A stretch of 64,000 nucleotides of DNA from Dimorphilus gyrociliatus. Taxonomy: Eukaryota; Animalia; Annelida. The stretch covers positions 310,001 through 374,000 of the forward strand of contig CAJFCJ010000029.1 in NCBI GenBank assembly GCA_904063045.1. The letters are read 5' to 3'. Position numbers and translations under genes: made by a program. Shown in pieces: positions 2,202 through 22,011 of the stretch (position 1 is the first letter of the stretch; the number at the start of each line of letters is the position of its first letter). Under the pieces are notes generated by a model. It was not told the origin of the DNA. It ran no database searches and saw nothing but the letters and a program-made list of their open reading frames with translations.

Positions 2202-2822
2202 AGTGAAGGGAGAGAGAATTGATAGAACATAGAGAAAAAGAGGGAAAACATTTGGGAATCTTTCTTCTCGCATTTTTTTTAAGATAACGCAAACGAAGTA
2301 TATTTAGACACATTTAAGTTTTATCTGCATATTTACAAGTTTCTAAGAAAATATAAATATTTTAAGTAATGTACATAATGCACGGGTCTTGCTGAGATTA
2401 ATAAATAAAAAATACGTATGTAAGGAATAAAGCGTATGTAAGATATAGTTACATTTTATTATACAGTAAAGATTGTAGATATATGTCGATGGCGCTACTG
2501 TCAACCGTAATTCGCCAATCACACTATTCGCGTTTACCAGTCAAGATGATCAACTACTATTTTTCTTTATTGAACCTCTCTTGCCTACGGTACGAAACTG
2601 TTCGATATTACTATGTACATTGTTGTTTAGCATATCTATGTACTTTTTATATCATTTTTGTATTATTGTGTATCATTCTAAACCGCTTTTCATGGCTTGT
2701 GAAAGTGCTATGTTCTTTTGGTTGGTTTACATTATTCGCATATTTCTTATCAATTTTGCAGAGCTAGGGATCATCGAGAACAGAGTCAATAGCTTCGCTC
2801 CCGAGTATGACTTTGAAGTGAT

Positions 2823-4836
2823 ATGGCCGATAATGAAGATCAAAGCGCTCTACAGCCACCTGATTATCCAGTCTCCCCTCCTCCAACGTTTGCCCAAGCT
2901 ACCCAAGCCACTTCAGCTTTTATCCATCCAGCAGTTATACATAAGTCTCCACTCGACAGATCATTTTCCGTGCCATGTAAATCACAATCAAACGACAGAA
3001 CTTGCCCACCAAATCCTGCTAACGTTCAACTGACCGTTGATGAGATGGAAGAGACCTGTGACTTTCCAAATCGTCACGTTCCATCAATTGACGAGGCCGT
3101 AACCCCACCAGTGACTCCAAGTAGACCTACTTTAGGTTCGATTTTTAAAGGTAGAAGGTTACCTAGTCTAAAACTGAAAAGAAATCGAATGGGATCTATT
3201 CGATCACACAAAGGTTCTGAACCACCCTCACCTGTGACTTCAACACATGGGCCTACAATAACCGTAACTGGTGGATCAGATGAAGAGGCTACATCGATGA
3301 TTAGCGACTATTTGTCACCCGATAAATTCAATTACAAACGTGAGGCGAAATGCCATTTTATAGGCGATGATGTTAGCTTATACGGTACTCCAAAGGAAGA
3401 ATATTCACCGGTGAATTTAGGCAAAGAGACGGTAAATAAGTCGTCTGCTTCCTCCTTTCTCAAGGATCAAATCATTTCATTCTTTCAACCGTCCGATAAT
3501 AAGTTGGCTATGAAATTGTTTGGAAACAAGAATGCATTATTAAAAGAAAAGATGAGACAAAAAGCAGCAGGAAACTGGGTAATTCATCCTTGTTCGAATT
3601 TCAGGTTAGATTGCTTTGCAGACGATCTCGTAACTATAGGTGACATTTGAAAGTTGCGGAGAAATGTAATAAAAAGGCGTCTATAGGCCTGAATTCCTAT
3701 ATATTTGTAGATTGCTGTCGGACATTGCTAAATCGCGCGTTCGACATTTTAGCAGATTAGCGTTGACAAGAAAAGCGCGAAAGAACATTTAGGCGCGGCG
3801 TCTACTAAACTCGCAACGTCAGTTCGCATACAAGTACAGGAAGTGGAGTGCTGTAGCGGCCATTTTCCCTAGCGTTTGTCAGTAAATGTCGAGCCCTGAT
3901 TACATTTGCAGTCTGGTTTTTTTAGGTTGTTTCCCCGCTGAAAGGCTGTTATTACCAGTCTTAAATTCTGCCCCTTTTTTTCTTCCTTTTTCTTTAGATT
4001 TTATTGGGACTTGTTTATGCTCATTCTACTTATCGCAAACTTAATTATCCTACCTGTGGCCATCTCATTTTTCAACGACGATTTATCAACTAGGTGGATT
4101 GTATTCAATAGCGTCAGTGATACGGTATTCCTTCTAGATCTCATCATCAACTTCAGGACAGGTACGTTACTAATGTTTGTTTTAAGATGATGTGTGATGC
4201 CATATAATGAACTACAAGGCAGACAAACATCCACACCTCAATCATTTGGTGTAAATCTTTTATCGTACTTGGTTCTTTTATTTTGTCTTCAAACCCCTTA
4301 TTAAAAATGCCTTGTTAAGATCTTGAAATGAAAAATAATTTCCGACCGATTTAATCAGAGGCAGGAAATTGCTAAGCTTCAGGGAAATTTCTGCTAACAA
4401 CTGATATTTCCGTTGCAATTGACTGCTACTATTCAGTAATATTTTGACCTCATTTAGTACGAAAAGATCTCACCACTAAAATTTGTAAATAAGCCTAAAT
4501 AATATAACAAGATTGACAAGTGTCGTTATACAAATTGACGCAGGTATCATCGCCGACAATTTCGTCGACGAAATAATACTTGAGCCGAAGGAAATCGCTA
4601 AGCACTACTTGAAGACCTGGTTCTTCCTCGACCTCATCTCCTCTATCCCTTTAGATTATATTATCCTTCTATTCTCACCTCAGACCAACATCACGCAGAT
4701 TATTCACATCGGCCGAGGATTAAGAATCTTTAGACTCGTCAAACTCTTATCTTTGCTCAGATTACTTCGGCTCTCGAGACTTGTACGCTACATCAGTCAA
4801 TGGGAGGAGGTAAGTGCATTACTTTCGCATTATTAG

Positions 4837-4884
<48 letters not shown>

Positions 4885-7800
4885 ATTTATATGTATATAT
4901 ATATATATAAAATATATATAGTAGCCAGTTTAGTATATCTTCTTATATTGAATGAAAATTCTTTAAAGTAGATTAATCTTTTTTTTTTACAAATAGAGCA
5001 TATATCATACATATCCACATCTAGAGCATTCACTACTTTTACTTATATTTTAATAACAGATAGGCCTATTAGAGTTTTTAAAGGCGTTTCCAAAAAGCGA
5101 TCTTTGACTTCAAAGAAGAGCTTTTTGTTCTGGAAATTTTTCTAAAAGCACGATTCTATTCTAACTTATTCCTTAAAAAACTTTATTAACAATAACTTGA
5201 AAAGTAAAAAGAAGAACAATGAAAAAAAAATTTTAGTTCTTAGTCAGCAAAAATATTTCTTTTTAATAGGAAATTCTTTTTTAATTTTTTTTTATTTAAT
5301 ATATTATTGTATTTTCTCTTCATGATTACTCAGGATATTGGAAAGGTACTTTTGTCTCTTGTAGAGAAAAAAAAGTTTCATCCTTTTTTTTTTATTTCTT
5401 TTTTTTCCCTCAAATTACAACTTTTAGCTTATTAAATCGAGCATGATAATTTTCTAAAGCTAAAAAAAAAAGGAATTATTGCATTTAAAAAATCATATCT
5501 ATTTAAGCAATTTTTGTCTTTTAGATTATTTGCAAGAGCGCGCGAAGCACGTCACTTTATTATATTACTAAACACTTTGCACACGCGTTTTTTTCTCTCT
5601 CTCTCTCTCTCTGTATTATTTTTTTCTTCCATTCTCTTTATATTATTTTCGATATTAAAGGCTATAAAAGATATTCTCAACCTTTAGTTTTCTTTTACTA
5701 TTACATAGTATGTACTGTAATTGATCCTGTTGCTGGATCTATATAAAAGCTGCTTTTTTAATTATTCTTTGATTTTACAATAATATAGATAATATATATA
5801 GAAAAAATATTAGTCAAAGGATCAGACACAACCTTAATTGTCAAATTTGCAGTTTCTTAGTTTCGCTGGAAAATTCATGAGATTATTCAACTTGGTTTGT
5901 TTGATGCTCTTACTCGGCCACTGGAACGGATGTTTGCAGTGGTTTGTACCGATGTTGAGGGACTACCCTCAGAATTCATGGGTGGCCATTAACGAGCTTC
6001 AGGTAGAGATTTTTCCAAGCGAGAGAAACAAAAACAAATCATGCATGATCTTTATTCGGCCATTGTTTGATAGCATGTTGCATAACTCTGTGTTTCTAAC
6101 TGTTGTTTCTTTATTACTTTTTTTGCTACTATTTCTGTGCTGAAAGTAGGAGGCGCGCGAACAATTCTACCTTTTACGACCAAATAAAAACATGTAATTA
6201 CGTCTACGTACTCACATGTATTAAACCAACATAAAAATAGATGAAAAAATTGATATATTAGCTCATATATCAATATATCAATATACTTTTCTTTAATATG
6301 CTTGTTTATAAAATTTATTGTATATCGTTGTTTTTCTTTCTTCTGAAAATCACAGTTTCTGAGCGTTGCTGGCATGTTTATGAGGATATTTAATCTCATT
6401 TGTCTAATGCTACTTCTTGGACATTGGAATGGATGTCTTCAGTTCCTCGTTCCCCTGTTGCAAGATTATCCCGCCGATTCGTGGGTGTCTATCAACGAGC
6501 TTCAGGTGTGCTTGCATGCTTCCGTAAACCATAATTAAAAGAAACAGGAATCAAAAAATCGACGCCGTCCGTGTTAATTAAAGCGACGTCTGTATAAGCG
6601 TTCCTCTCCAATCCATAGTCGTATCAACTTGTAAAAAATCACTTATATTTCGCGATGACGTCATATCCTTTAATTCCACTCTTCAATATTTTGTATTTAT
6701 ATAAAATGGTTCTGAGGTAATGGAGAAACTATCCACAACTTAATGAGGGAAATAAAGAAGAAAATTACAGAAAATTCGCGGAATATAAAAAAATGTTTCT
6801 TTCGAAAGGGCATCACTTTTAACATTAGCATCAGGGCGACCCCTCGAATGCTGATGTTAGAGCTGAAGCTTATTTAATTATTATTGAATGTATTCATTTA
6901 TCATTCGTACAGAAAGCCTACTGGGGAGATCAGTATACGTGGGCGTTATTTAAGGCACTCTCCCATATGCTCTGCATCGGATATGGGAAATTTCCTCCTC
7001 AATCTACGACCGACGTCTGGTTAACTATGGTTAGCATGTTAACAGGCGCCACGTGCTATGCCCTATTCGTAGGTCACGCAACGACTCTTATCCAATCTTT
7101 TGACACTTCCAAGAGGCTATATAGAGAAAAGGTAAATCATTATACGTTTGTATGTGTGTTCTTCGATCGATAAACGCGCTAAAGTGAATGCAGCAGAAGA
7201 AGGAGTTTCGCCGCCGGCCATTTGCCTTTGATTATTTGGAGTTCGAGTGCGCAACATGCAGTAGTAACTCGCCCACTCCATAACCCTCCCAACCCCGTAC
7301 TTCTTCTCTTGCTAGCCCGTGTAAACTCTTTCATTTAAATTGATAAAAATCTAAAGGAATTTTTTTTTATACCCACTATCTTTACGCTTTGCAGTTCAAA
7401 CAAGTGGAAGAGTATATGATATATCGTAAACTACCCCGGTCTCTTCGTCAAAGAATTTCGGATTTTTATGAACACCGATATCAAGGAAAGATGTTCGATG
7501 AGGAGCGCATTCTATCGGAACTGAATGAATGCCTTCGGGAGGTAATTATCCATAAAAAAAACTTTAAATTAATCGCTTCTTTGGATCGATTATAACGTCC
7601 CTGTACTAAAACGAATAGAGCAGAAAACGGGTACAGCCTTATTCATTCTGCATTGTCATTTTTTTTCTTAATAAGACTAAAGAAACTATTCTTTGCATCA
7701 ATAAAACATAACTATTATTAACTATGTAAGGTATCTCGCATTAAATGCTTTATCCTTCTTCGCTAGACTGGATTTCTTCTTATAAGCAGTTTTTTTTCGT

Positions 7801-8763
7801 TTTAGCAGAAAAATGTTTATAAATAATCTAAAAGAAATAAAATTGTAGCTTATGTCATATACGTCATAACAACAGGCTATATAACGTTGACTTATTATGT
7901 TGTATATTCTTTTATCATATAAAAGACGGTCAAAGGGAGACTGAGACGGATTTGTGTTACCATGGACGCTATCATCCCGTGTCAGAAAAAGAGTCAATGA
8001 CTTTCATATCATATCTTTACTATTCTTTACAGGAAATTGTCAATTTCAACTGCCGAGCATTAGTCGCCTCCGTACCATTTTTCACTCATGCTGATCCAAA
8101 TTTCGTTTCGGATGTTGTAACGAAATTACAATATGAAGTTTTCCAACCGGGAGATTTAGTGATAAAAGAAGGAACGATTGGAACGAAAATGTATTTTATT
8201 CAGGAAGGAATAGTAGATATAGTTACGAAAAACGGAGAAGTTGCCACTAGTTTGAGTGATGGAAGTTACTTCGGCGGTAAGCGCATTTACCATGTTTGCC
8301 TCTTCCCTTTTCTTTATAAGATTATTTTCACAAAGAAATCTGCCTACTTACAAATGCGAAACGAGTAGCGTCCGTTAGAGCGGAAACCTACTGCAATTTG
8401 TATTCTCTGTCAGTCGAACACTTCAACTCTGTATTAGATCATTATCCCGTAATGAGACGAACAATGGAATCGGTAGCCGCAGAACGCTTGAACAAAATAG
8501 GTAAGAATCCATCGATTGTGTCTAACAGAGCTGAATTGGAAGAAGATATAAACACCGTCAATGAATTGATAATGCAAACAACACCTTTGGCGTCATCTGG
8601 CTCCGAAGGGTCTCTTACTAACATTGAGGAGGAAAAGGCCAAATTTTCTGACGACATGGACGAAGAGATTCGCAAACCAGCGCTCAAAAAATCCGTTTCG
8701 GACTGTTTAGTCTCTCGCCATAGAAGTTCACCAACTCAACCTGATAAGGAATCTTTAGTTTGA
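2823..8763 (+). CDS. HCN: Hyperpolarization-activated cyclic nucleotide-gated channel (Ih)
   Basis: Exons 2823-3604, 3998-4161, 4544-4809, [5853-6002 or 6356-6505], 6913-7131, 7395-7541, 8033-8276, 8336-8763; all GT-AG and phase-compatible. Motifs: HCN domain ([16 protein letters not shown]-type, [14 protein letters not shown]), S4 [23 protein letters not shown], pore [12 protein letters not shown]-linker, CNBD ([20 protein letters not shown]). In-frame TGA at 2814-2816 precedes the ATG. Confidence 0.96.
4840..4921. repeat. (TA)n microsatellite in HCN intron 3
   Basis: Visible TA run. Confidence 0.9.
5853..6002 (+). CDS. HCN: HCN alternative exon 4a (S4-S5 linker end, S5, turret)
   Basis: ttgcag| 150 nt |gtagag; [50 protein letters not shown]. 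Confidence 0.9.
6356..6505 (+). CDS. HCN: HCN alternative exon 4b (duplicate of 4a)
   Basis: cacag| 150 nt |gtgtgc; [50 protein letters not shown]; missed by the ORF track. Confidence 0.92.
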
Positions 8764-15966: not shown

Positions 15967-16214
15967 ATGTCTTCCACTGACTTAAAAATCCAGCTGAAAA
16001 GGCGAGATGAGGAAATCGAGCAGCTAAAAAGCCGTCTAGCCGAAAAAGATGATGAATTGGAAAAGTTACGAGTACTTGTGGATCAGTACAAGAGTGTCCT
16101 GGAACCTTCGAGTGGTGCTACAGGTCCCCGCCAACGTGGCGTTGGGATATCGGCTGAACCACAAGCTAAAAATATCGAACAAAGGCCGCTTCAAGTGCAC
16201 AACAAAAGCGAAAG
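15967..16214 (+). CDS. PRKG1: PKG alternative first exon 1a (I-alpha-like leucine zipper)
   Basis: [34 protein letters not shown]...[14 protein letters not shown]...KSE; donor AG|gttagc, phase 2. Confidence 0.88.
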
Positions 16215-19200
16215 GTTAGCCGCAGTACGCGATTGTCATTGTTTCTGTTATAGTGCCGTCTGTATAACTATTCGTAATCATTTAAGAGAAAAATGTAGTT
16301 CTAAACTATTCGCCGTTCAAACCAACTTCTTCGACTTGAGCTGACTGGCATTGTGATTAATAATCGCAAACTGTTTACATTGTCAAGCAGTATTCTAGGT
16401 CGTTTTTATATCAATTGGAGCTTGTTCCGTTCGATAACGATTGACATAGATATTTTTGCGCTAAATGTAAAATACTCCAGACTAAACTGGAAGTGCACAG
16501 TTTTAAAAATAGAAAAAGTACGCGCCCCGCACAACTCAACTCTCCTAGACTTTTTCTCACCTTTCTTACGCCATCTTTCGGATGTTAAAAGCAAAATTCG
16601 CAGAAATGCGAGCTGACATTAACGCTTGAAAGGTGTCGCTGCAATCGAAGTTTGCCGATAGTTGGAAGAAGGATGGCGTATACCCTGCGAGAATTGCAAT
16701 TCGTCCTGCGGCAAAAGGTCGAAGAGATTGAACAACGAGACGAACTAATCGACGAGCTTGAGAACGAAATCGATAAGAAAGATGAGATTATAAATCGTTT
16801 ACAGAATGAGTTAGACAAATGCCGGAGTGTATTAAACACAAAAGTTTGCCAGTGTTCTTTTAAATCAGTAGATGAAAAACCAAGAAAGAAAAGAACAGCT
16901 ATATCAGCTGAGCCTCCAAAAACTCTTCTTTCTTTTCCTGCCCGTGTCCCAAAGGATTCCGCGTGAGTATCGAGAAAGGCTTGTACAAAGAAAAGTTAAA
17001 ATTGTAGAATTTGGAAAAGAATATAGTATGTCTACTACATTTTCCCGAGGTTTTTATTGTGTAGAATATCTAACTAATGAGAACAATGAACTTGAGAATT
17101 TTCTATGAGAGTATCTCAAAGAATGAAAGAGAAAAAAAGTATGGGAGGGGGGCTCATATATATAAGTAGAAAAAAAGATATCTAAGAAAAAATCACCAGG
17201 CCTCCATACTCCCGAAATTACCGCTTTTATTACTTCCATCCGCGTAACGGCTAGCAATAAAATAACTGTATTGGGTGGAATTTTTGAGTATATAGGTCTA
17301 AAGTATTTTACTTCAAGTACATACTTGACTGTCGGCAGCGTCGCTAAGAATTTACGAGACGCCGTTAGATGCAATGAGTTCATGAGTCGCTACGACGATA
17401 TACTAATATCGCAAATGGTTGATTGTATGAGATCGGAAACTCGAGAAGCCGATGAGGTTATTATCAAGGAGGGAACTTTCGGCGATAACCTTTACGTTCT
17501 TGAAGGTACAAGGAGATCTATTACAAAAAAAGATTGATCGCTTATTAGTTCGTTTCATCATTCACTATTATCCAGTTTTTGTGCTCTATTAAGCTGATCC
17601 TGAACGTTTACCGCCATTTAATTAGATAAATACTGCTTATATGAAAATTTCCACTTTTGCTGCTTTATGTTGTTTTTTTTTACGCTTTCAACAGATCGAA
17701 GGAGATAATCGGCAATGCAATACTGGATAATGATTTCATGAAGAATCTTGAAAAAGCTCAGATCAATGAGATTGTCGATTGCATGTATAAAATGGATTTT
17801 AAATCTGGACAAATGATTATTAAAGAAGGCGATGTCGGCTCGGAAGTATACGTTATGGAAGGCACGTTCATTATATTAGACGCCTTTACCTTGTTGTCAG
17901 TAGGGATATAATCAGCATGTTATCCTTATAAATACTAACATAAACAAGTGTGTAAAGGCGACTAATTGCTTTAGTTTTGGTCATTTCTCTATTGAGGGAA
18001 GGGACAGCAGCCTGTCATATTTAAATTGGGCTAAACCTCGAGAAATGCAGTGTGGTCAATTCGTCGATCGTTTTGATCATGCATCGTGTGACCACAAACT
18101 AATTTCGTTTTTGCTTCGAGCGCGCTTTATAAAATACAGAACGACTTTTCATTCCATTTGACTTTGTTAGCTGCCATATTCATCTACTTTCCTGCCAATT
18201 ACGTAATGTTTCCTTTTCTTGTTTTAAACATTTAACAGAGGGTCAAGTTCTCGTAACTAATAATAAGAAACTCGAGCGTAAAATGTCGGCCGGAAAAGTG
18301 TTTGGTGAATTAGCCATATTGTACAACTGTAAAAGAACGGCTTCTATTAAAGGTTTGTTTCCCTTTGGGAGTACACAGCTTTATTTCTAAATACATTTTC
18401 TCACGCCATTTTTTTCTAGCGATAACCAATTGTAAGCTATGGGCTATAGATCGGCTAAATTTCCAAAGTATTATGATGAAAACTGGGATGAAAAGACGAG
18501 AAGAGTACATCAAGTTCTTAAAAAGGTAAAAGCCAGTATATAATTAAACGTAATTTACGTCCTGTTCTACGATTCTCTCTTTCTTCTTTCTTTCACTCAA
18601 TATACAGCATTCCACAATTTAACAACCGCAAAGAGGAAACGCTAGGATCGATTGCCGACGTTCTAGAAGAAGTCCATTTTGAAAAGGATGAATATATCAT
18701 TCGACAAGGTGCCGTCGGCGATACGTTCTACATAATAGCTAAAGGACAGGTCAGTGTATATGTTTTATAGGCGTCCTAGATATTTTTTGTATGGATTTCC
18801 ACTATTGCCGAATGGACGGCGTCGTTAAACATATTTCGAACGCGACGTAATGCGGTTTGTCGTTCGAATTCTCGCCGGACTATGCGACTTCGTCGAAAGA
18901 ATTAACGTATATATCGATTACGCAATATAGGCGAAGGAAACTGAGGGTACCGGTTCAACAGAAAAGACGAAAAAAACTCTCAAAGTTGGAAGCTGGTTTG
19001 GTTTGGCCGCACTGGAAAGGTTTTAATAAGCGTGTGTTTTTTTTCTATATTTATATAAAAAATGTTTTTTGTTTTTTTTATTTTCACGCGAAACATTTGC
19101 AGTGTTTTACAGTTATATTATTTATTTTCCTCACTATCTCTATCTGTTTTTCTCTTTCACCTCCTTTCTGAAACTTCCTAGGTTCTGGTTACGAAAAACG

Positions 19201-22011
19201 GTAACAATAACGATGAACCTGATTTCAAACCGAAATTCTTGAAAAGGGGCGATTATTTCGGAGAGAGGGCACTCGAAAGGTATATTTTTCCCTGTCGAAC
19301 GGCCATTTCCAGCCATTATTTATCTCATTTTATCATTATCTTTTTTTCGGCTTTGTCTTATAAATTAGCTTTTCTTTTGAAACACAAAAAGAAAATTGGA
19401 AGTAAAAAAAAAAAGCAAAAAAATATTCCAGATTTCTTATTTTAATTTGCTGCTTTTTTGACGTTTTTTTAAAAAAAAATTAATAAGCTACAAACAACTA
19501 AGAAAGACAAGAAAAATATGTTTTTTTTTCTTTTTTTCTTTTGTTTTCTATAGGGAGGAGACACGATCTGCAAATATTATCGTCACTGATCCTAACGGAG
19601 TGGATTGCCTCCAATTGGAAAGAGAGTAAGTTTTTTACACTCTTTAAATATCATTCGCATAATAAATTGAATATACTTTTACAATACGGTCAATGTAGAG
19701 GGAGACGTTTACCCTTGAGACGTTTTCCTTCTTGTTTATACATGCTACTTCGTACAACCGTATATAATTTCCGGAGAGAAGCAGTGAAAATCTATTCACT
19801 CATTGGTCAATTGAGCAAGAAAAAATAACAGGGTTTTGACCTAAAGCTCAAATTAATTACCTATTAACGCTAAATTAGGTCTATTTATCAGCGACTATTC
19901 TTTGAGCCACGACCGTCGCCTAGTCGGTGATAGTTCGGCCTGATAAGCATAGAGTGGAAGGACAAACAAGCGCGTTTGTTAGACGCCGATAAAACCTAAA
20001 TCTATTAAATTGTCGTATTTTTTATTGCAGCGCCTATAAACAGATTATCAGCCACATAATATCGCCAACCGTACCTCGTATGAGATCGTTAGAAAGGTAA
20101 GTTGGCCAACAATCAATAGTCGGTTGTCTGCATTAAAAAAAAAAGAAGAAAACGTAACACAACAAGAGCTTAGGGAATTTTTTTTGAATAGTGGTCGAAA
20201 CGAATTCAGCGATATAAAACCTAGCGATTTATCGAGCTTGAAAACATTGGGAGTCGGTGGATTTGGTCGCGTCGAGTTGGTAAGCCATTAGATGGCGCCA
20301 CTCTGTCCTAATTTTCACGTAGGCCTATAATTTGGAAAAATATTTCACCTTCCTATTTTTTACATCTTAAAACTGAAGCCTTTTTTTCACACTAATTTAT
20401 ACTCTTTATGTTCTCTTTTTTTTTGTTTTCTACAGTTTTTTTTAAGTAGCTGACCGCTTCAAAAGACTGAAAACTATCTGAGAAAGTCGTGAATGCTATT
20501 TTGATTTGTATTAAATATAATATTCTCACGATTCTTGTATAGTTTTCACTTTTTCTACTTTCTATTATTATTTGTTTTTACTCTCTAAATTGTGTTGTGC
20601 ACTCTGTTTTTTCTCTATACTTCAGCGATTCCCCTGCTAGCCTAATTGGTATTCAACTTTCCAAGTTTAACTTTATCACAACCCTCGGTGTAGGTGGATT
20701 CGGCCGAGTAGATCTAGTAAGTGTCCTAGATATTGTAAACAAAAAAAAATAAGAAAAAGAAAAAAACTAATAAAATTCTTTTTTTCTTCTCTTCTTTGGG
20801 CAGTCTATTTTTCTCTTTTTAATCAAATATTTTCCTTTATTAAAAAAATATAAAGTAATAATAAAATCTTAAAATAACTAAATTAAATTGATAAATTGAC
20901 TTTTGTATATTTATACAACTTTATGAATATCTTATTATTCTTGAAAACATAAGATATTCTATATAAATATACAAGGAAAAGAAAACATTGAAAATAAAAA
21001 TTAAGTGTTGAGGGAATGTTTGTTATCTCTAAATATTTTTGCAGGTTTGCATAGGAAAGGATAAAGCAAAAACGTTTGCCTTGAAAAAGTTGAAAAAACA
21101 ACATATAGTCGATACAAGGCAAGAAGAGCATATCCTAAATGAAAAGAGAATAATGCAAAAAGCTCGATGCGATTTTATCGTTCGATTATACACAACCTTC
21201 AAGGATGCCAAATATCTCTATATGCTGTTGGAAGTTTGCCTGGGAGGTGAACTGTGGAGTCTACTAAGGGATAAAAGTCACTTTGACGATTCTATGACTA
21301 GATTCTATACTGCTTGCGTATGCGAGGCCTTAATTTACTTACACGGTTTAGGCATTGTATATCGGGATTTAAAACCAGAGAATCTTCTTTTAGATACGTC
21401 CGGTTTTATTAAGCTCGTCGACTTTGGATTCGCAAAAGAAATAGGACATGGGCGTAAAACTTGGACATTTTGCGGAACACCCGAATATGTTGCTCCAGAA
21501 ATCATATTGAATAGAGGTCATGATTTATCGTGTGATTTATGGTCGCTAGGAATCCTTATGTTCGAATTATTGACGGGAAATCCCCCATTCTCTGGAGCGG
21601 ATCCAATGAAGACTTATAATATTATTCTTAGAGGAATTGATGCAATTGACTTTCCTAGACGAATTACAAGACATGCGCAAAACTTGATTAAGAAATTGTG
21701 CAGGTAAAACTATATTAAATTAAAAAAACAAGGTGTAATAAATATGTATTATAAAATGATTCTTTGTTAATTTTTGCCTTAGGGATAATCCTACAGAAAG
21801 ATTAGGCTACGGAAGAGGAGGAATTAAAGATATACAAAAGCACAAATGGTTTGATGGTTTCAATTGGGAAGGCTTGAGAAGAAGATCCTTGAAACCACCG
21901 TACGTTCCGAAAGTTATGAGCGCGTCTGACGCTTCAAATTTTGATGAGTATCCTCCAGCAACCGAGCCAGAACCTCCAGATGATATTTCTGGATGGGACA
22001 AAGACTTTTGA
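15967..22011 (+). CDS. PRKG1: cGMP-dependent protein kinase type I-like, with four alternative exon pairs
   Basis: Exons [15967-16214 or 16673-16962], [17339-17505 or 17695-17861], 18239-18352, 18420-18525, 18608-18749, [18931-19019 or 19182-19279], 19554-19625, 20031-20096, [20192-20279 or 20626-20716], 21045-21703, 21783-22011. Leucine zipper plus ISAEP autoinhibitory site, two CNB domains ([14 protein letters not shown]; [10 protein letters not shown]), kinase ([40 protein letters not shown]), C-terminus SGWDKDF*. Confidence 0.96.
16673..16962 (+). CDS. PRKG1: PKG alternative first exon 1b (I-beta-like leucine zipper)
   Basis: [54 protein letters not shown]...[12 protein letters not shown]; donor GC|gtgagt, phase 2. 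Confidence 0.92.
17339..17505 (+). CDS. PRKG1: PKG alternative exon 2a (CNB-A N-terminal half, divergent copy)
   Basis: 167 nt, phase 2 to 1; [55 protein letters not shown]; donor gtacaa; weak pyrimidine tract. Confidence 0.8.
17695..17861 (+). CDS. PRKG1: PKG alternative exon 2b (CNB-A N-terminal half, canonical copy; GC donor)
   Basis: 167 nt, phase 2 to 1; [31 protein letters not shown]...[15 protein letters not shown]; the homologous donor is AAG|GCACGT. Confidence 0.88.
18931..19019 (+). CDS. PRKG1: PKG alternative exon 6a (CNB-B beta-strands and PBC start, divergent)
   Basis: aatatag| 89 nt |gtttta, phase 0 to 2; [29 protein letters not shown]; 3' end GCACTGGAAAG is almost identical to 6b GCACTCGAAAG. 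Confidence 0.72.
19182..19279 (+). CDS. PRKG1: PKG alternative exon 6b (CNB-B, canonical FGE)
   Basis: ttcctag| 98 nt |gtatat, phase 0 to 2; [32 protein letters not shown]. Confidence 0.9.
20192..20279 (+). CDS. PRKG1: PKG alternative exon 9a (kinase beta1 and glycine-rich loop)
   Basis: ttttgaatag| 88 nt |gtaagc, phase 2 to 0; [29 protein letters not shown]. Confidence 0.87.
20626..20716 (+). CDS. PRKG1: PKG alternative exon 9b (kinase beta1 and glycine-rich loop)
   Basis: tacttcag| 91 nt |gtaagt, phase 2 to 0; [30 protein letters not shown]. Confidence 0.87.

What the first reader, a model, noticed from the sequence alone, without database searches (positions are those of the whole stretch)
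18931..19019. PKG exon 6a would build a CNB-B site lacking the invariant phosphate-binding-cassette Glu (FGE to FGL)
Seen: 6a encodes [15 protein letters not shown] versus 6b [15 protein letters not shown]; codon TTG (Leu) at 19003-19005 replaces GAG. The 3' ends of the two exons are nearly identical in DNA, supporting homology. Known: the G-E of the PBC hydrogen-bonds the ribose 2'-OH of the cyclic nucleotide, and CNB-B is the cGMP-selective site in PKG-I. Inference: splicing switches CNB-B off or changes its selectivity, giving a kinase with altered activation threshold or a dominant regulatory partner in dimers.
Basis: partly seen in the sequence, partly recalled or inferred. Interest (0 to 1): 0.78.

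Follow-up and report, generated by a model that had tools for sequence, protein, structure and literature searches.

The report
Alternative PKG exon lacking ribose-binding glutamate
A cGMP-dependent protein kinase gene of a small invertebrate genome has two interchangeable versions of one exon; the unusual version, used in about a third of transcripts in the one RNA data set available, rebuilds the second cGMP pocket without the glutamate found there in 276 of 277 related kinases (the other has aspartate).

Summary
Exon 6a (18931-19019) has AG/GT borders, an open frame and the same phase as exon 6b (19182-19279). It is clearly related to 6b (score 38 against 15±3 for shuffles). Codon TTG at 19003-19005 puts Leu where 6b has the cassette Glu.

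Exon 6a is expressed. In the only public run holding it, which is RNA by its spliced contigs, exon 5 joins 6a (depth 515) and 6b (depth 1065). Together these match the depth of the flanking constitutive junctions. Coverage stops at the 6a donor and no 6a-to-6b junction is listed. The 6a-to-7 junction itself was not displayed: the tool dropped two joints at the T-run before exon 7.

Among 277 PKG CNB-B sites, 276 have Glu, one Asp, none Leu. Three annelid-like genomic contigs carry a single exon 6.

Exon 6a keeps the fold-defining residues but swaps four charged pocket residues for uncharged ones. The functional reading is inference: most likely weaker or differently coupled cGMP binding, so a different activation threshold. 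"Switched off" is not shown, because Epac binds cAMP without this Glu and a cassette mutation can activate PKG.

This is a new variant of known kinds.

The parts
18608..18749 (+). Exon 5: start of CNB-B (helices and strands beta1-beta3, ...[14 protein letters not shown]). It ends in phase 0 and is the shared upstream partner of 6a and 6b.
   Evidence: Translation. Matches PKG I CNB-B in PDB at E = 1.2e-17. Pfam cNMP_binding E = 1.9e-5. RNA contig spans exons 3-4-5 (record 4).
18931..19019 (+). Exon 6a, 89 nt: alternative version of strands beta4-beta6 and the first half of the phosphate-binding cassette (…[15 protein letters not shown]).
   Evidence: AG/GT borders and open frame. Homology to 6b: score 38 against 15 ± 3 for shuffles. 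RNA joint 18747->18929 (true 18749->18931), GT..AG, depth 515. Single copy in the genome.
19003..19005 (+). TTG, the Leu codon at the position of the cassette Glu (human PKG I-beta Glu307).
   Evidence: Of 277 PKG CNB-B cassettes, 276 have Glu and one Asp. Numbering checked on P0184.
19020..19181 (+). 162-nt intron between 6a and 6b (donor gtttta, acceptor ...cttcctag).
   Evidence: Depth bin 19012-19168 is only 23, against about 515 on 6a, so there is essentially no read-through. No 6a->6b joint is listed.
19182..19279 (+). Exon 6b, 98 nt: canonical version (VLVTK…[15 protein letters not shown]).
   Evidence: Weak PDB hits to PKG chains. RNA joint 18747->19180 (true 18749->19182), depth 1065. 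Single copy.
19554..19625 (+). Exon 7, shared: second half of the cassette ([11 protein letters not shown]; Arg codon 19564-19566, Ser 19567-19569) and strands beta7-beta8.
   Evidence: Translation. Joint 19625->20031 to exon 8, depth 1777. Joints into 19554 were not displayed: the tool dropped 2 joints at the skipped repeat 19510-19552.
17339..17505 (+). Exon 2a (context): diverged alternative for the start of CNB-A, mutually exclusive with 2b.
   Evidence: Loose end at 17337 carries the end of the N-terminal exon. Joint 17503->18237, depth 372. Sequence.
17695..17861 (+). Exon 2b (context): canonical start of CNB-A, followed by a GC-AG intron.
   Evidence: Loose end at 17693 carries the same upstream letters as at 17337. 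Joint 17859->18237, depth 614. 67-76% identical to other PKGs.
20192..20279 (+). Exon 9a (context): glycine-loop exon, ...[11 protein letters not shown].
   Evidence: Joints 20094->20190 (depth 965) and 20278->21044 (depth 782).
20626..20716 (+). Exon 9b (context): alternative glycine-loop exon, ...[11 protein letters not shown].
   Evidence: Joints 20094->20624 (depth 853) and 20716->21045 (depth 853). Sequence.

Best explanation
Exon 6a is a genuine, heavily used, mutually exclusive partner of exon 6b in a PKG-I-type gene. The gene has a leucine zipper with a pseudosubstrate, tandem CNB-A and CNB-B domains, and an AGC kinase domain.

The splicing machinery picks one of the two exons. Only single inclusion keeps the reading frame.

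The chosen exon supplies strands beta4-beta6 and the first turn of the phosphate-binding cassette of CNB-B. The phosphate-binding Arg-Ser comes from shared exon 7.

The 6a version keeps the residues that define the fold and the hinge (Leu -7, Gly -4, Phe-Gly, Ala-Leu). It replaces four charged pocket residues with uncharged ones:
- Lys/Arg to Val at position -5
- Asp to Ser at position -3
- Glu to Leu at position +1, the ribose 2'-OH anchor
- Lys/Arg to Ala at position +2

It also rewrites strand beta4.

The most likely result is a CNB-B that holds cGMP much more weakly, or couples binding to cassette closure differently. The 6a isoform would then have a different cGMP activation threshold from the 6b isoform.

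**Shown:** exon anatomy, homology, use of the 6a acceptor, roughly one third usage, no read-through past the donor, and rarity of a non-Glu cassette.

**Inferred:** the exact 6a-to-7 junction, production of protein, and every biochemical consequence.
For: **Anatomy and homology**
-.

**RNA**
- Run X1 gives spliced contigs identical to the window.
- Joints 5->6a (depth 515) and 5->6b (depth 1065) are both GT..AG.
- Their sum, 1580, lies between the flanking constitutive depths (1460 for exons 3-4-5, 1777 for 7->8).
- The bin after 6a has depth 23.
- No 6a->6b joint is listed.
- Exactly two joints were dropped at the repeat that abuts the exon 7 acceptor. The obligatory 6b->7 joint is also missing from the table, so the drop accounts for both.

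**Conservation pattern**
- 6a retains the near-invariant scaffold positions. It matches the PKG consensus at Thr -8 and Trp -2, where 6b does not.
- 6a shares LKVG with the single exon 6 of the annelid-like contigs. 6b shares VLVTK and FGERALE with it. Each copy therefore keeps different ancestral residues, so 6a is not a recent decaying copy of 6b.

**Role of the Glu**
- PMC3080414.

**Rarity**
- 276 Glu and 1 Asp among 277 cassettes.
- All listed mollusc isoforms have FGE.
Against: - The 6a->7 junction was not displayed. It is inferred from depth arithmetic and from the tool's note on dropped rows.
- There is only one run and one study. Contig depths are rough measures.
- No protein evidence exists.
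- No relative with a 6a-like exon was found, so conservation (purifying selection) is untested.
- Strand beta4 of 6a (AKETEG in place of V-x-V-T) has lost its hydrophobic pattern, so the domain might fold poorly.
- Glu-less CNB domains can bind ligand (Epac), so the affinity loss could be small.
- The joined 5-6a-7 model was not folded.
Confidence: 0.55

Rival explanations
1. The 6a isoform is a raised-basal or partly cGMP-independent kinase. Removing the charged cassette residues destabilises the open, autoinhibitory conformation of CNB-B or mimics the closed one. Splicing would then turn the brake down rather than turn the sensor off.
For: A cassette substitution in PKG I-alpha (R177Q) activates the kinase constitutively. 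Mutations that favour the closed cassette are predicted to activate (10.1101/2022.04.28.489861). In PKA RI-alpha the same Glu forms a salt bridge that matters for activation (PMC3080414). The hinge residues Ala-Leu are kept in 6a.
Against: The precedent is in CNB-A and concerns the Arg, not the Glu. There are no data on Glu-to-Leu in any PKG (literature search found nothing).
Confidence: 0.15
2. The 6a pocket still binds a cyclic nucleotide well but with changed preference, as in Epac. The switch would then be one of ligand selectivity (cAMP against cGMP, or tolerance of 2'-modified ligands) rather than of affinity.
For: Epac1 (Gln270) and Epac2 (Lys405) lack the Glu yet respond to cAMP, and that one position sets analogue selectivity (PMC4300089). 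The phosphate-binding Arg-Ser from exon 7 is unchanged. 6a keeps Thr -8, Leu -7 and Trp -2.
Against: Leu cannot hydrogen-bond at all, unlike Gln. Three more charged residues are lost. Both exons already lack the guanine-reading Arg.
Confidence: 0.12
3. 6a is a drifting duplicate that the spliceosome still uses. The mRNA is made, but the protein folds poorly or is inert, with no selected function.
For: 6a alone gives no Pfam or PDB hit. Its first half has no similarity to any PKG. No 6a-like exon was seen in 277 PKGs or in three outgroup contigs. An open 29-codon frame has roughly a 12% chance in DNA of this composition (my estimate).
Against: Roughly one third of junction depth is far above splicing noise. 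Frame, phase and both splice sites are intact. All six near-invariant scaffold residues survive although the rest has diverged strongly. Two other exon pairs in the same gene behave the same way.
Confidence: 0.15
4. Artefact: the 5->6a junction is an assembly chimera, or the run contains genomic DNA.
For: One run only. The junction rests on one contig with 27 letters on the short side. The run's kind is not on record.
Against: The same run shows 11 clean joints: ten read GT..AG as listed and one reads as a GC-AG intron once its cut is shifted by 2. All lie at the predicted exon borders, and intron depth is 20-60 times lower. Genomic DNA cannot make a joint. The junction depth fits the flanking exons.
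Confidence: 0.03

Closest known systems
Mammalian PKG I-alpha / I-beta (PRKG1 alternative first exons)
   Same: One PKG-I gene makes isoforms with different cGMP sensitivity by swapping a coding exon. This gene also has two alternative zipper/pseudosubstrate first exons (…GISAEP and …AISAEP). Domain order and sequence are PKG I.
   Different: In mammals the swap lies outside the cGMP pockets. Here the swapped exon builds the CNB-B pocket itself and removes the cassette Glu. I found no report of this.
Epac1 / Epac2 cyclic-nucleotide-binding domains
   Same: Working CNB domains that lack the ribose-binding Glu (Gln270, Lys405). That position tunes affinity, maximal activation and analogue selectivity (PMC4300089).
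   Different: In Epac the substitution is fixed in the gene, not chosen by splicing. Epac has Gln or Lys rather than Leu, and it is a cAMP sensor in an exchange factor rather than a kinase.
Degenerate CNB domains in multi-CNB proteins (for example CNB2 of Plasmodium CBP-O)
   Same: A CNB fold kept in the protein while the key cassette residues are replaced, read by the authors as loss of cGMP binding (PMC12422582).
   Different: Those domains lose both the Glu and the Arg, and permanently. Here the Arg is kept and the canonical version is made from the same gene.
Mutually exclusive exon clusters of invertebrate signalling genes (sodium channels, nAChR alpha6, Dscam)
   Same: Tandem homologous exons of matching phase, one chosen per transcript. 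The same window holds candidate pairs in an HCN channel and an nAChR.
   Different: No docking/selector RNA pairing was found here, only A/T-run pairings. Exclusivity can be explained by the reading frame alone.

Membership tests
PKG type I (the gene) | N-terminal coiled coil followed by a pseudosubstrate (…ISAEP) | tested here: met
   Read directly: exon at 15967-16214 ends …[12 protein letters not shown]…, and the alternative exon near 16675-16964 has …[10 protein letters not shown]. The first matches PKG N-termini at about 41% identity.
PKG type I (the gene) | Two tandem cyclic-nucleotide-binding domains | tested here: met
   Exon 5 against PDB PKG I chains: E = 1.2e-17, with a second weaker match to CNB-A. 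Pfam cNMP_binding on exons 2b, 3 and 5 is below the cut-off because the pieces are short.
PKG type I (the gene) | C-terminal AGC kinase domain closest to PKGs | tested here: met
   The kinase exon 21045-21703 is 70-75% identical to several of its best-scoring matches. Those later named by a source are PKGs.
Ligand-binding CNB domain (6a version of CNB-B) | Cassette Gly-Glu, with the Glu side chain bonding the ribose 2'-OH | tested here: not met
   Gly-Leu in 6a (TTG at 19003-19005). Glu in 276 of 277 PKGs.
Ligand-binding CNB domain (6a version of CNB-B) | Cassette Arg that binds the cyclic phosphate, followed by Thr or Ser | tested here: met
   R-S-A encoded by shared exon 7 (19564-19572).
Ligand-binding CNB domain (6a version of CNB-B) | Eight-stranded beta barrel with conserved Gly and hydrophobic pattern | tested here: inconclusive
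   The beta5-beta6 scaffold residues are kept, but strand beta4 reads AKETEG. The joined model was not folded.
Ligand-binding CNB domain (6a version of CNB-B) | Measured binding of cGMP or cAMP | not testable with these tools
   Needs recombinant protein.
Mutually exclusive exon pair (6a/6b) | Adjacent, homologous exons with the same phase | tested here: met
   Lengths 89 and 98 nt, both 2 mod 3.
Mutually exclusive exon pair (6a/6b) | Both joined to the same upstream exon in RNA | tested here: met
   Joints from 18749 to 18931 and to 19182.
Mutually exclusive exon pair (6a/6b) | Both joined to the same downstream exon | tested here: inconclusive
   Neither joint into 19554 is listed. The tool dropped 2 joints at the repeat 19510-19552. 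Depth falls from about 515 to 23 at the 6a donor.
Mutually exclusive exon pair (6a/6b) | No transcript with both exons | tested here: met
   No 19019->19182 joint. Contigs show presence rather than absence, so rare double inclusion is not excluded.

The most novel reading that the evidence does not exclude
One PKG gene uses splicing to exchange parts of both cGMP sites (2a/2b, 6a/6b) and the kinase glycine loop (9a/9b). The diverged 'a' modules may be used together as a second, paralogue-like kinase. Its CNB-B would no longer read cGMP through the ribose. It could instead sense another ligand, or serve as a ligand-independent regulatory domain.
Probability: 0.2. Interest if true: 0.8.

Novelty: new variant of a known kind. 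Interest (0 to 1): 0.58.

Why it matters
PKG sensitivity is known to be tuned by swapping the N-terminal exon. Here the pocket itself is swapped, at a residue that is almost never changed.

If the 6a isoform has a different threshold, basal activity or ligand preference, it would be a natural, reversible experiment on the role of the cassette Glu in PKG allostery. It would also show how a compact genome gets several cGMP sensors from one gene.

The pair of exons offers ready-made constructs (6a, 6b, and Leu/Glu swaps) for binding and activation assays.

Tried and rejected
- **6a alone against PDB sequences and Pfam:** no hit. The piece is too short and too diverged, so this is not informative.
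- **The search for homologous proteins and the search for related loci with 6a:** I then used the 48-aa reference 18606-18749.
- **MAFFT alignment of exon pieces to P0155 (A2):** it scattered the fragments. I did not use it as a profile.
- **Two word-index protein searches and one full-library search:** none returned a protein from this genome or from a close relative. Best identity was about 75% in the kinase domain.
- **RNA pairing that could enforce exclusivity:** only A-run/T-run pairings in 18751-19553. Rejected as low complexity.
- **Own-genome search for further 6a-like or 6b-like exons:** none found.
- **Literature:** nothing on Glu mutants of PKG or PKA and nothing on mutually exclusive exons in PKG CNB domains.
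- **Sequencing runs:** only one run held the exon, so there is no independent second study.

Full report
**What is there.**
The + strand between about 15967 and 22011 carries a PKG-I-type gene with short introns.

My exon reading around the finding:

| Exon | Coordinates | Note |
|---|---|---|
| 5 | 18608-18749 | ends CAG\|gt, phase 0 |
| 6a | 18931-19019 | 89 nt |
| 6b | 19182-19279 | 98 nt |
| 7 | 19554-19625 | shared |

- Exon 5 matches CNB-B of PKG I in solved structures at E = 1.2e-17.
- The kinase exon 21045-21703 is 70-75% identical to several of its best matches among PKGs.
- 6a has AG/GT borders and an open frame.
- TTG at 19003-19005 lies where 6b has GAG, giving FGLAALE against FGERALE.
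- Both exon lengths are 2 mod 3. Inclusion of exactly one keeps the frame.

**More than chance.**
- The 6a/6b local alignment (K-LK-G--FG--ALE) scores 38. Shuffles of 6a give 15.0 ± 3.0, and none of 5000 reached 38.
- 6a is the best non-self match to 6b in all open + strand frames of the gene region. It scores above the CNB-A cassette exon.
- At the DNA level only the last 11 nt are nearly identical.
- Each exon is single copy in the 77.9-Mb assembly.

**Is it spliced?**
- Only one public run holds the exon's words. Its kind is not on record.
- Laid on 16500-21200, it gives contigs 99-100% identical to the window, with 11 joints at exactly the predicted exon borders and intron depths 20-60 times lower. 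Ten joints read GT..AG as listed. The one after exon 2b reads as a GC-AG intron once its cut is shifted by 2. The run is therefore RNA.
- Exon 5 joins both 18931 (depth 515) and 19182 (depth 1065).
- These junction contigs are short, about 30 letters on the short side, so their depths approximate junction use.
- The sum, 1580, falls between the constitutive 3-4-5 contig (1460) and the 7->8 junction (1777). 6a therefore accounts for roughly one third of transcripts in that sample.
- The depth bin 18855-19011 (272) equals 81 nt of exon at about 515 plus a thin intron.
- The next bin, 19012-19168, is 23. That is about what the last few exon bases alone would give, so there is essentially no read-through past the gtttta donor.
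- No 6a->6b joint is listed.
- Neither 6a->7 nor the obligatory 6b->7 joint is listed either. The tool states that it dropped exactly two joints at the skipped repeat 19510-19552, which abuts the exon 7 acceptor.
- I therefore take 6a->7 as very likely, but not directly shown.

**How unusual is the Leu?**
- I collected 395 proteins. They came from one search of the full representative library, two word-index searches centred on CNB-B, and the listed members of ten spiralian clusters.
- Of these, 277 have a recognisable CNB-B cassette: 276 Glu, one Asp, no Leu.
- A looser scan found one Gln.
- All listed mollusc isoforms have FGE.
- Caveat: clusters at 90% identity can hide isoforms.

**What else changes?**
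Position-by-position comparison with 139 distinct PKG cassette neighbourhoods:
- 6a keeps the near-invariant positions: Leu -7, Gly -4, Phe -1, Gly 0, Ala +3, Leu +4.
- 6a agrees with the commonest residue at Thr -8, and carries the second-commonest (Trp) at -2. 6b deviates more at both (Phe -8, Tyr -2).
- 6a replaces four charged pocket residues:
  - Lys/Arg -5 to Val
  - Asp -3 to Ser
  - Glu +1 to Leu
  - Lys/Arg +2 to Ala
- Its first half (AKETEG…) has lost the V-x-V-T pattern of strand beta4.
- The phosphate-binding Arg-Ser is in shared exon 7.
- Both exons have Lys at -9, where 91% of PKGs have Arg. On a 686-aa PKG I-beta sequence this Arg is R297 and the cassette Glu is E307.
- The identification of R297 as the guanine-reading residue rests on my own recollection. 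It is consistent with the "BBR arginine" of 10.1101/2022.04.28.489861 and with the beta5 contacts described in PMC3765643.

**Origin.**
- A metagenome scan with exon 5 returned genomic contigs of animals.
- One group (L011-L022) shares the unusual GAVGD…GQ|VLVTK signature with this gene.
- In the three contigs that reach exon 6 (L012, L015, L016) there is a single exon, VLVTKS…RLKVGEFFGERALE, lying 1.8-2.2 kb after exon 5. No second copy lies between them.
- 6b shares VLVTK and FGERALE with that exon, and 6a shares LKVG. Each copy keeps different ancestral residues.
- This fits a lineage-specific tandem duplication followed by divergence, with 6a evolving faster.
- Orthology of those contigs is only weakly supported. 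From memory their record numbers resemble gutless-worm symbiont metagenomes. I could not check this.
- The exon's borders (after …KG[QK] and after AL[QE] plus two bases) are the same in those contigs and in a vertebrate-like contig (L024), so the exon is an old unit.

**Mechanism.**
- Documented: the cassette Glu hydrogen-bonds the ribose 2'-OH in PKG. In PKA RI-alpha it also forms a salt bridge important for activation (PMC3080414).
- Documented: cGMP closes the cassette, and that closure releases autoinhibition.
- Inference: Leu cannot make either bond. 6a should therefore weaken ribose anchoring and change how binding is coupled to closure, shifting the activation threshold.
- The direction and size of the shift are open. 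Epac works without this Glu (PMC4300089), and a cassette mutation can activate PKG.
- A poorly folding product cannot be excluded without folding the joined model.

**Context.**
The same RNA shows two further exon pairs in this gene:
- 2a/2b at the start of CNB-A, depths 372 and 614.
- 9a/9b at the glycine loop, depths 965 and 853.

In both CNB pairs the 'a' exon is the diverged one and takes about a third of the depth. This hints at coupled use but does not show it.

The genome also has at least two intron-poor PKG paralogues with canonical FGEKAL.

**Verdict.**
- The exon is real and abundantly used.
- The biochemical reading is plausible but untested.
- I found no report of a spliced exchange of a PKG cGMP pocket.
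- I rate it a new variant of known kinds (PKG isoform tuning, mutually exclusive exons, Glu-less CNB domains).

Noticed in passing
window 17339-17505 and 17695-17861: Two 167-nt alternative exons for the start of CNB-A. Both follow the same upstream exon and both join 18239 in RNA (depths 372 and 614). 2a is only 36-49% identical to other PKGs, against 67-76% for 2b. The intron after 2b begins with GC (a GC-AG intron).
   Followed up: partly
window 20192-20279 and 20626-20716: Two alternative exons encoding the kinase glycine-rich loop (…GFGRVEL against …GFGRVDL). Both are joined from exon 8 and to the kinase exon at similar depth (965/782 and 853/853).
   Followed up: partly
window 15967-16214 and about 16675-16964: Two alternative first coding exons with a coiled coil and a pseudosubstrate (GISAEP, AISAEP). 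Only the first is seen spliced to exons 2a/2b in run X1. The second lies in an unspliced contig covering 16500-17366 at depth 80.
   Followed up: partly
window 18976-18978 (6a) and 19233-19235 (6b): Both exon versions encode Lys where 91% of PKGs have the strand-beta5 Arg that reads guanine. The cGMP/cAMP selectivity of this kinase may differ from mammalian PKG I whichever exon is used.
   Followed up: partly
window 5838-5990 and 6347-6535: The upstream HCN-type channel gene (about 2800-8760, + strand) has two very similar open segments (…FNL[VI][14 protein letters not shown]…), a likely duplicated alternative exon.
   Followed up: no
L002 (G000:C6:3044446-3047565) and L003 (G000:C1:2735978-2739091): Two further PKG-like genes in the same genome. 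Both CNB domains lie in one long open frame (few introns), with canonical FGELAIL/IGELAIL and FGEKALL cassettes.
   Followed up: partly
P0258, P0259 (a stingray PKG1, isoforms X7 and X4): These annotated isoforms carry a 16-residue insertion inside the CNB-B cassette, right after FGEKALQG. This is the position of the exon 6/7 border here.
   Followed up: no
L012 3864-3956; L015 5319-5411; L016 4850-4942: Animal genomic contigs in metagenomes with a single exon 6 (VLVTKS…RLKVGEFFGERALE). It looks like the unduplicated form of 6a/6b.
   Followed up: partly
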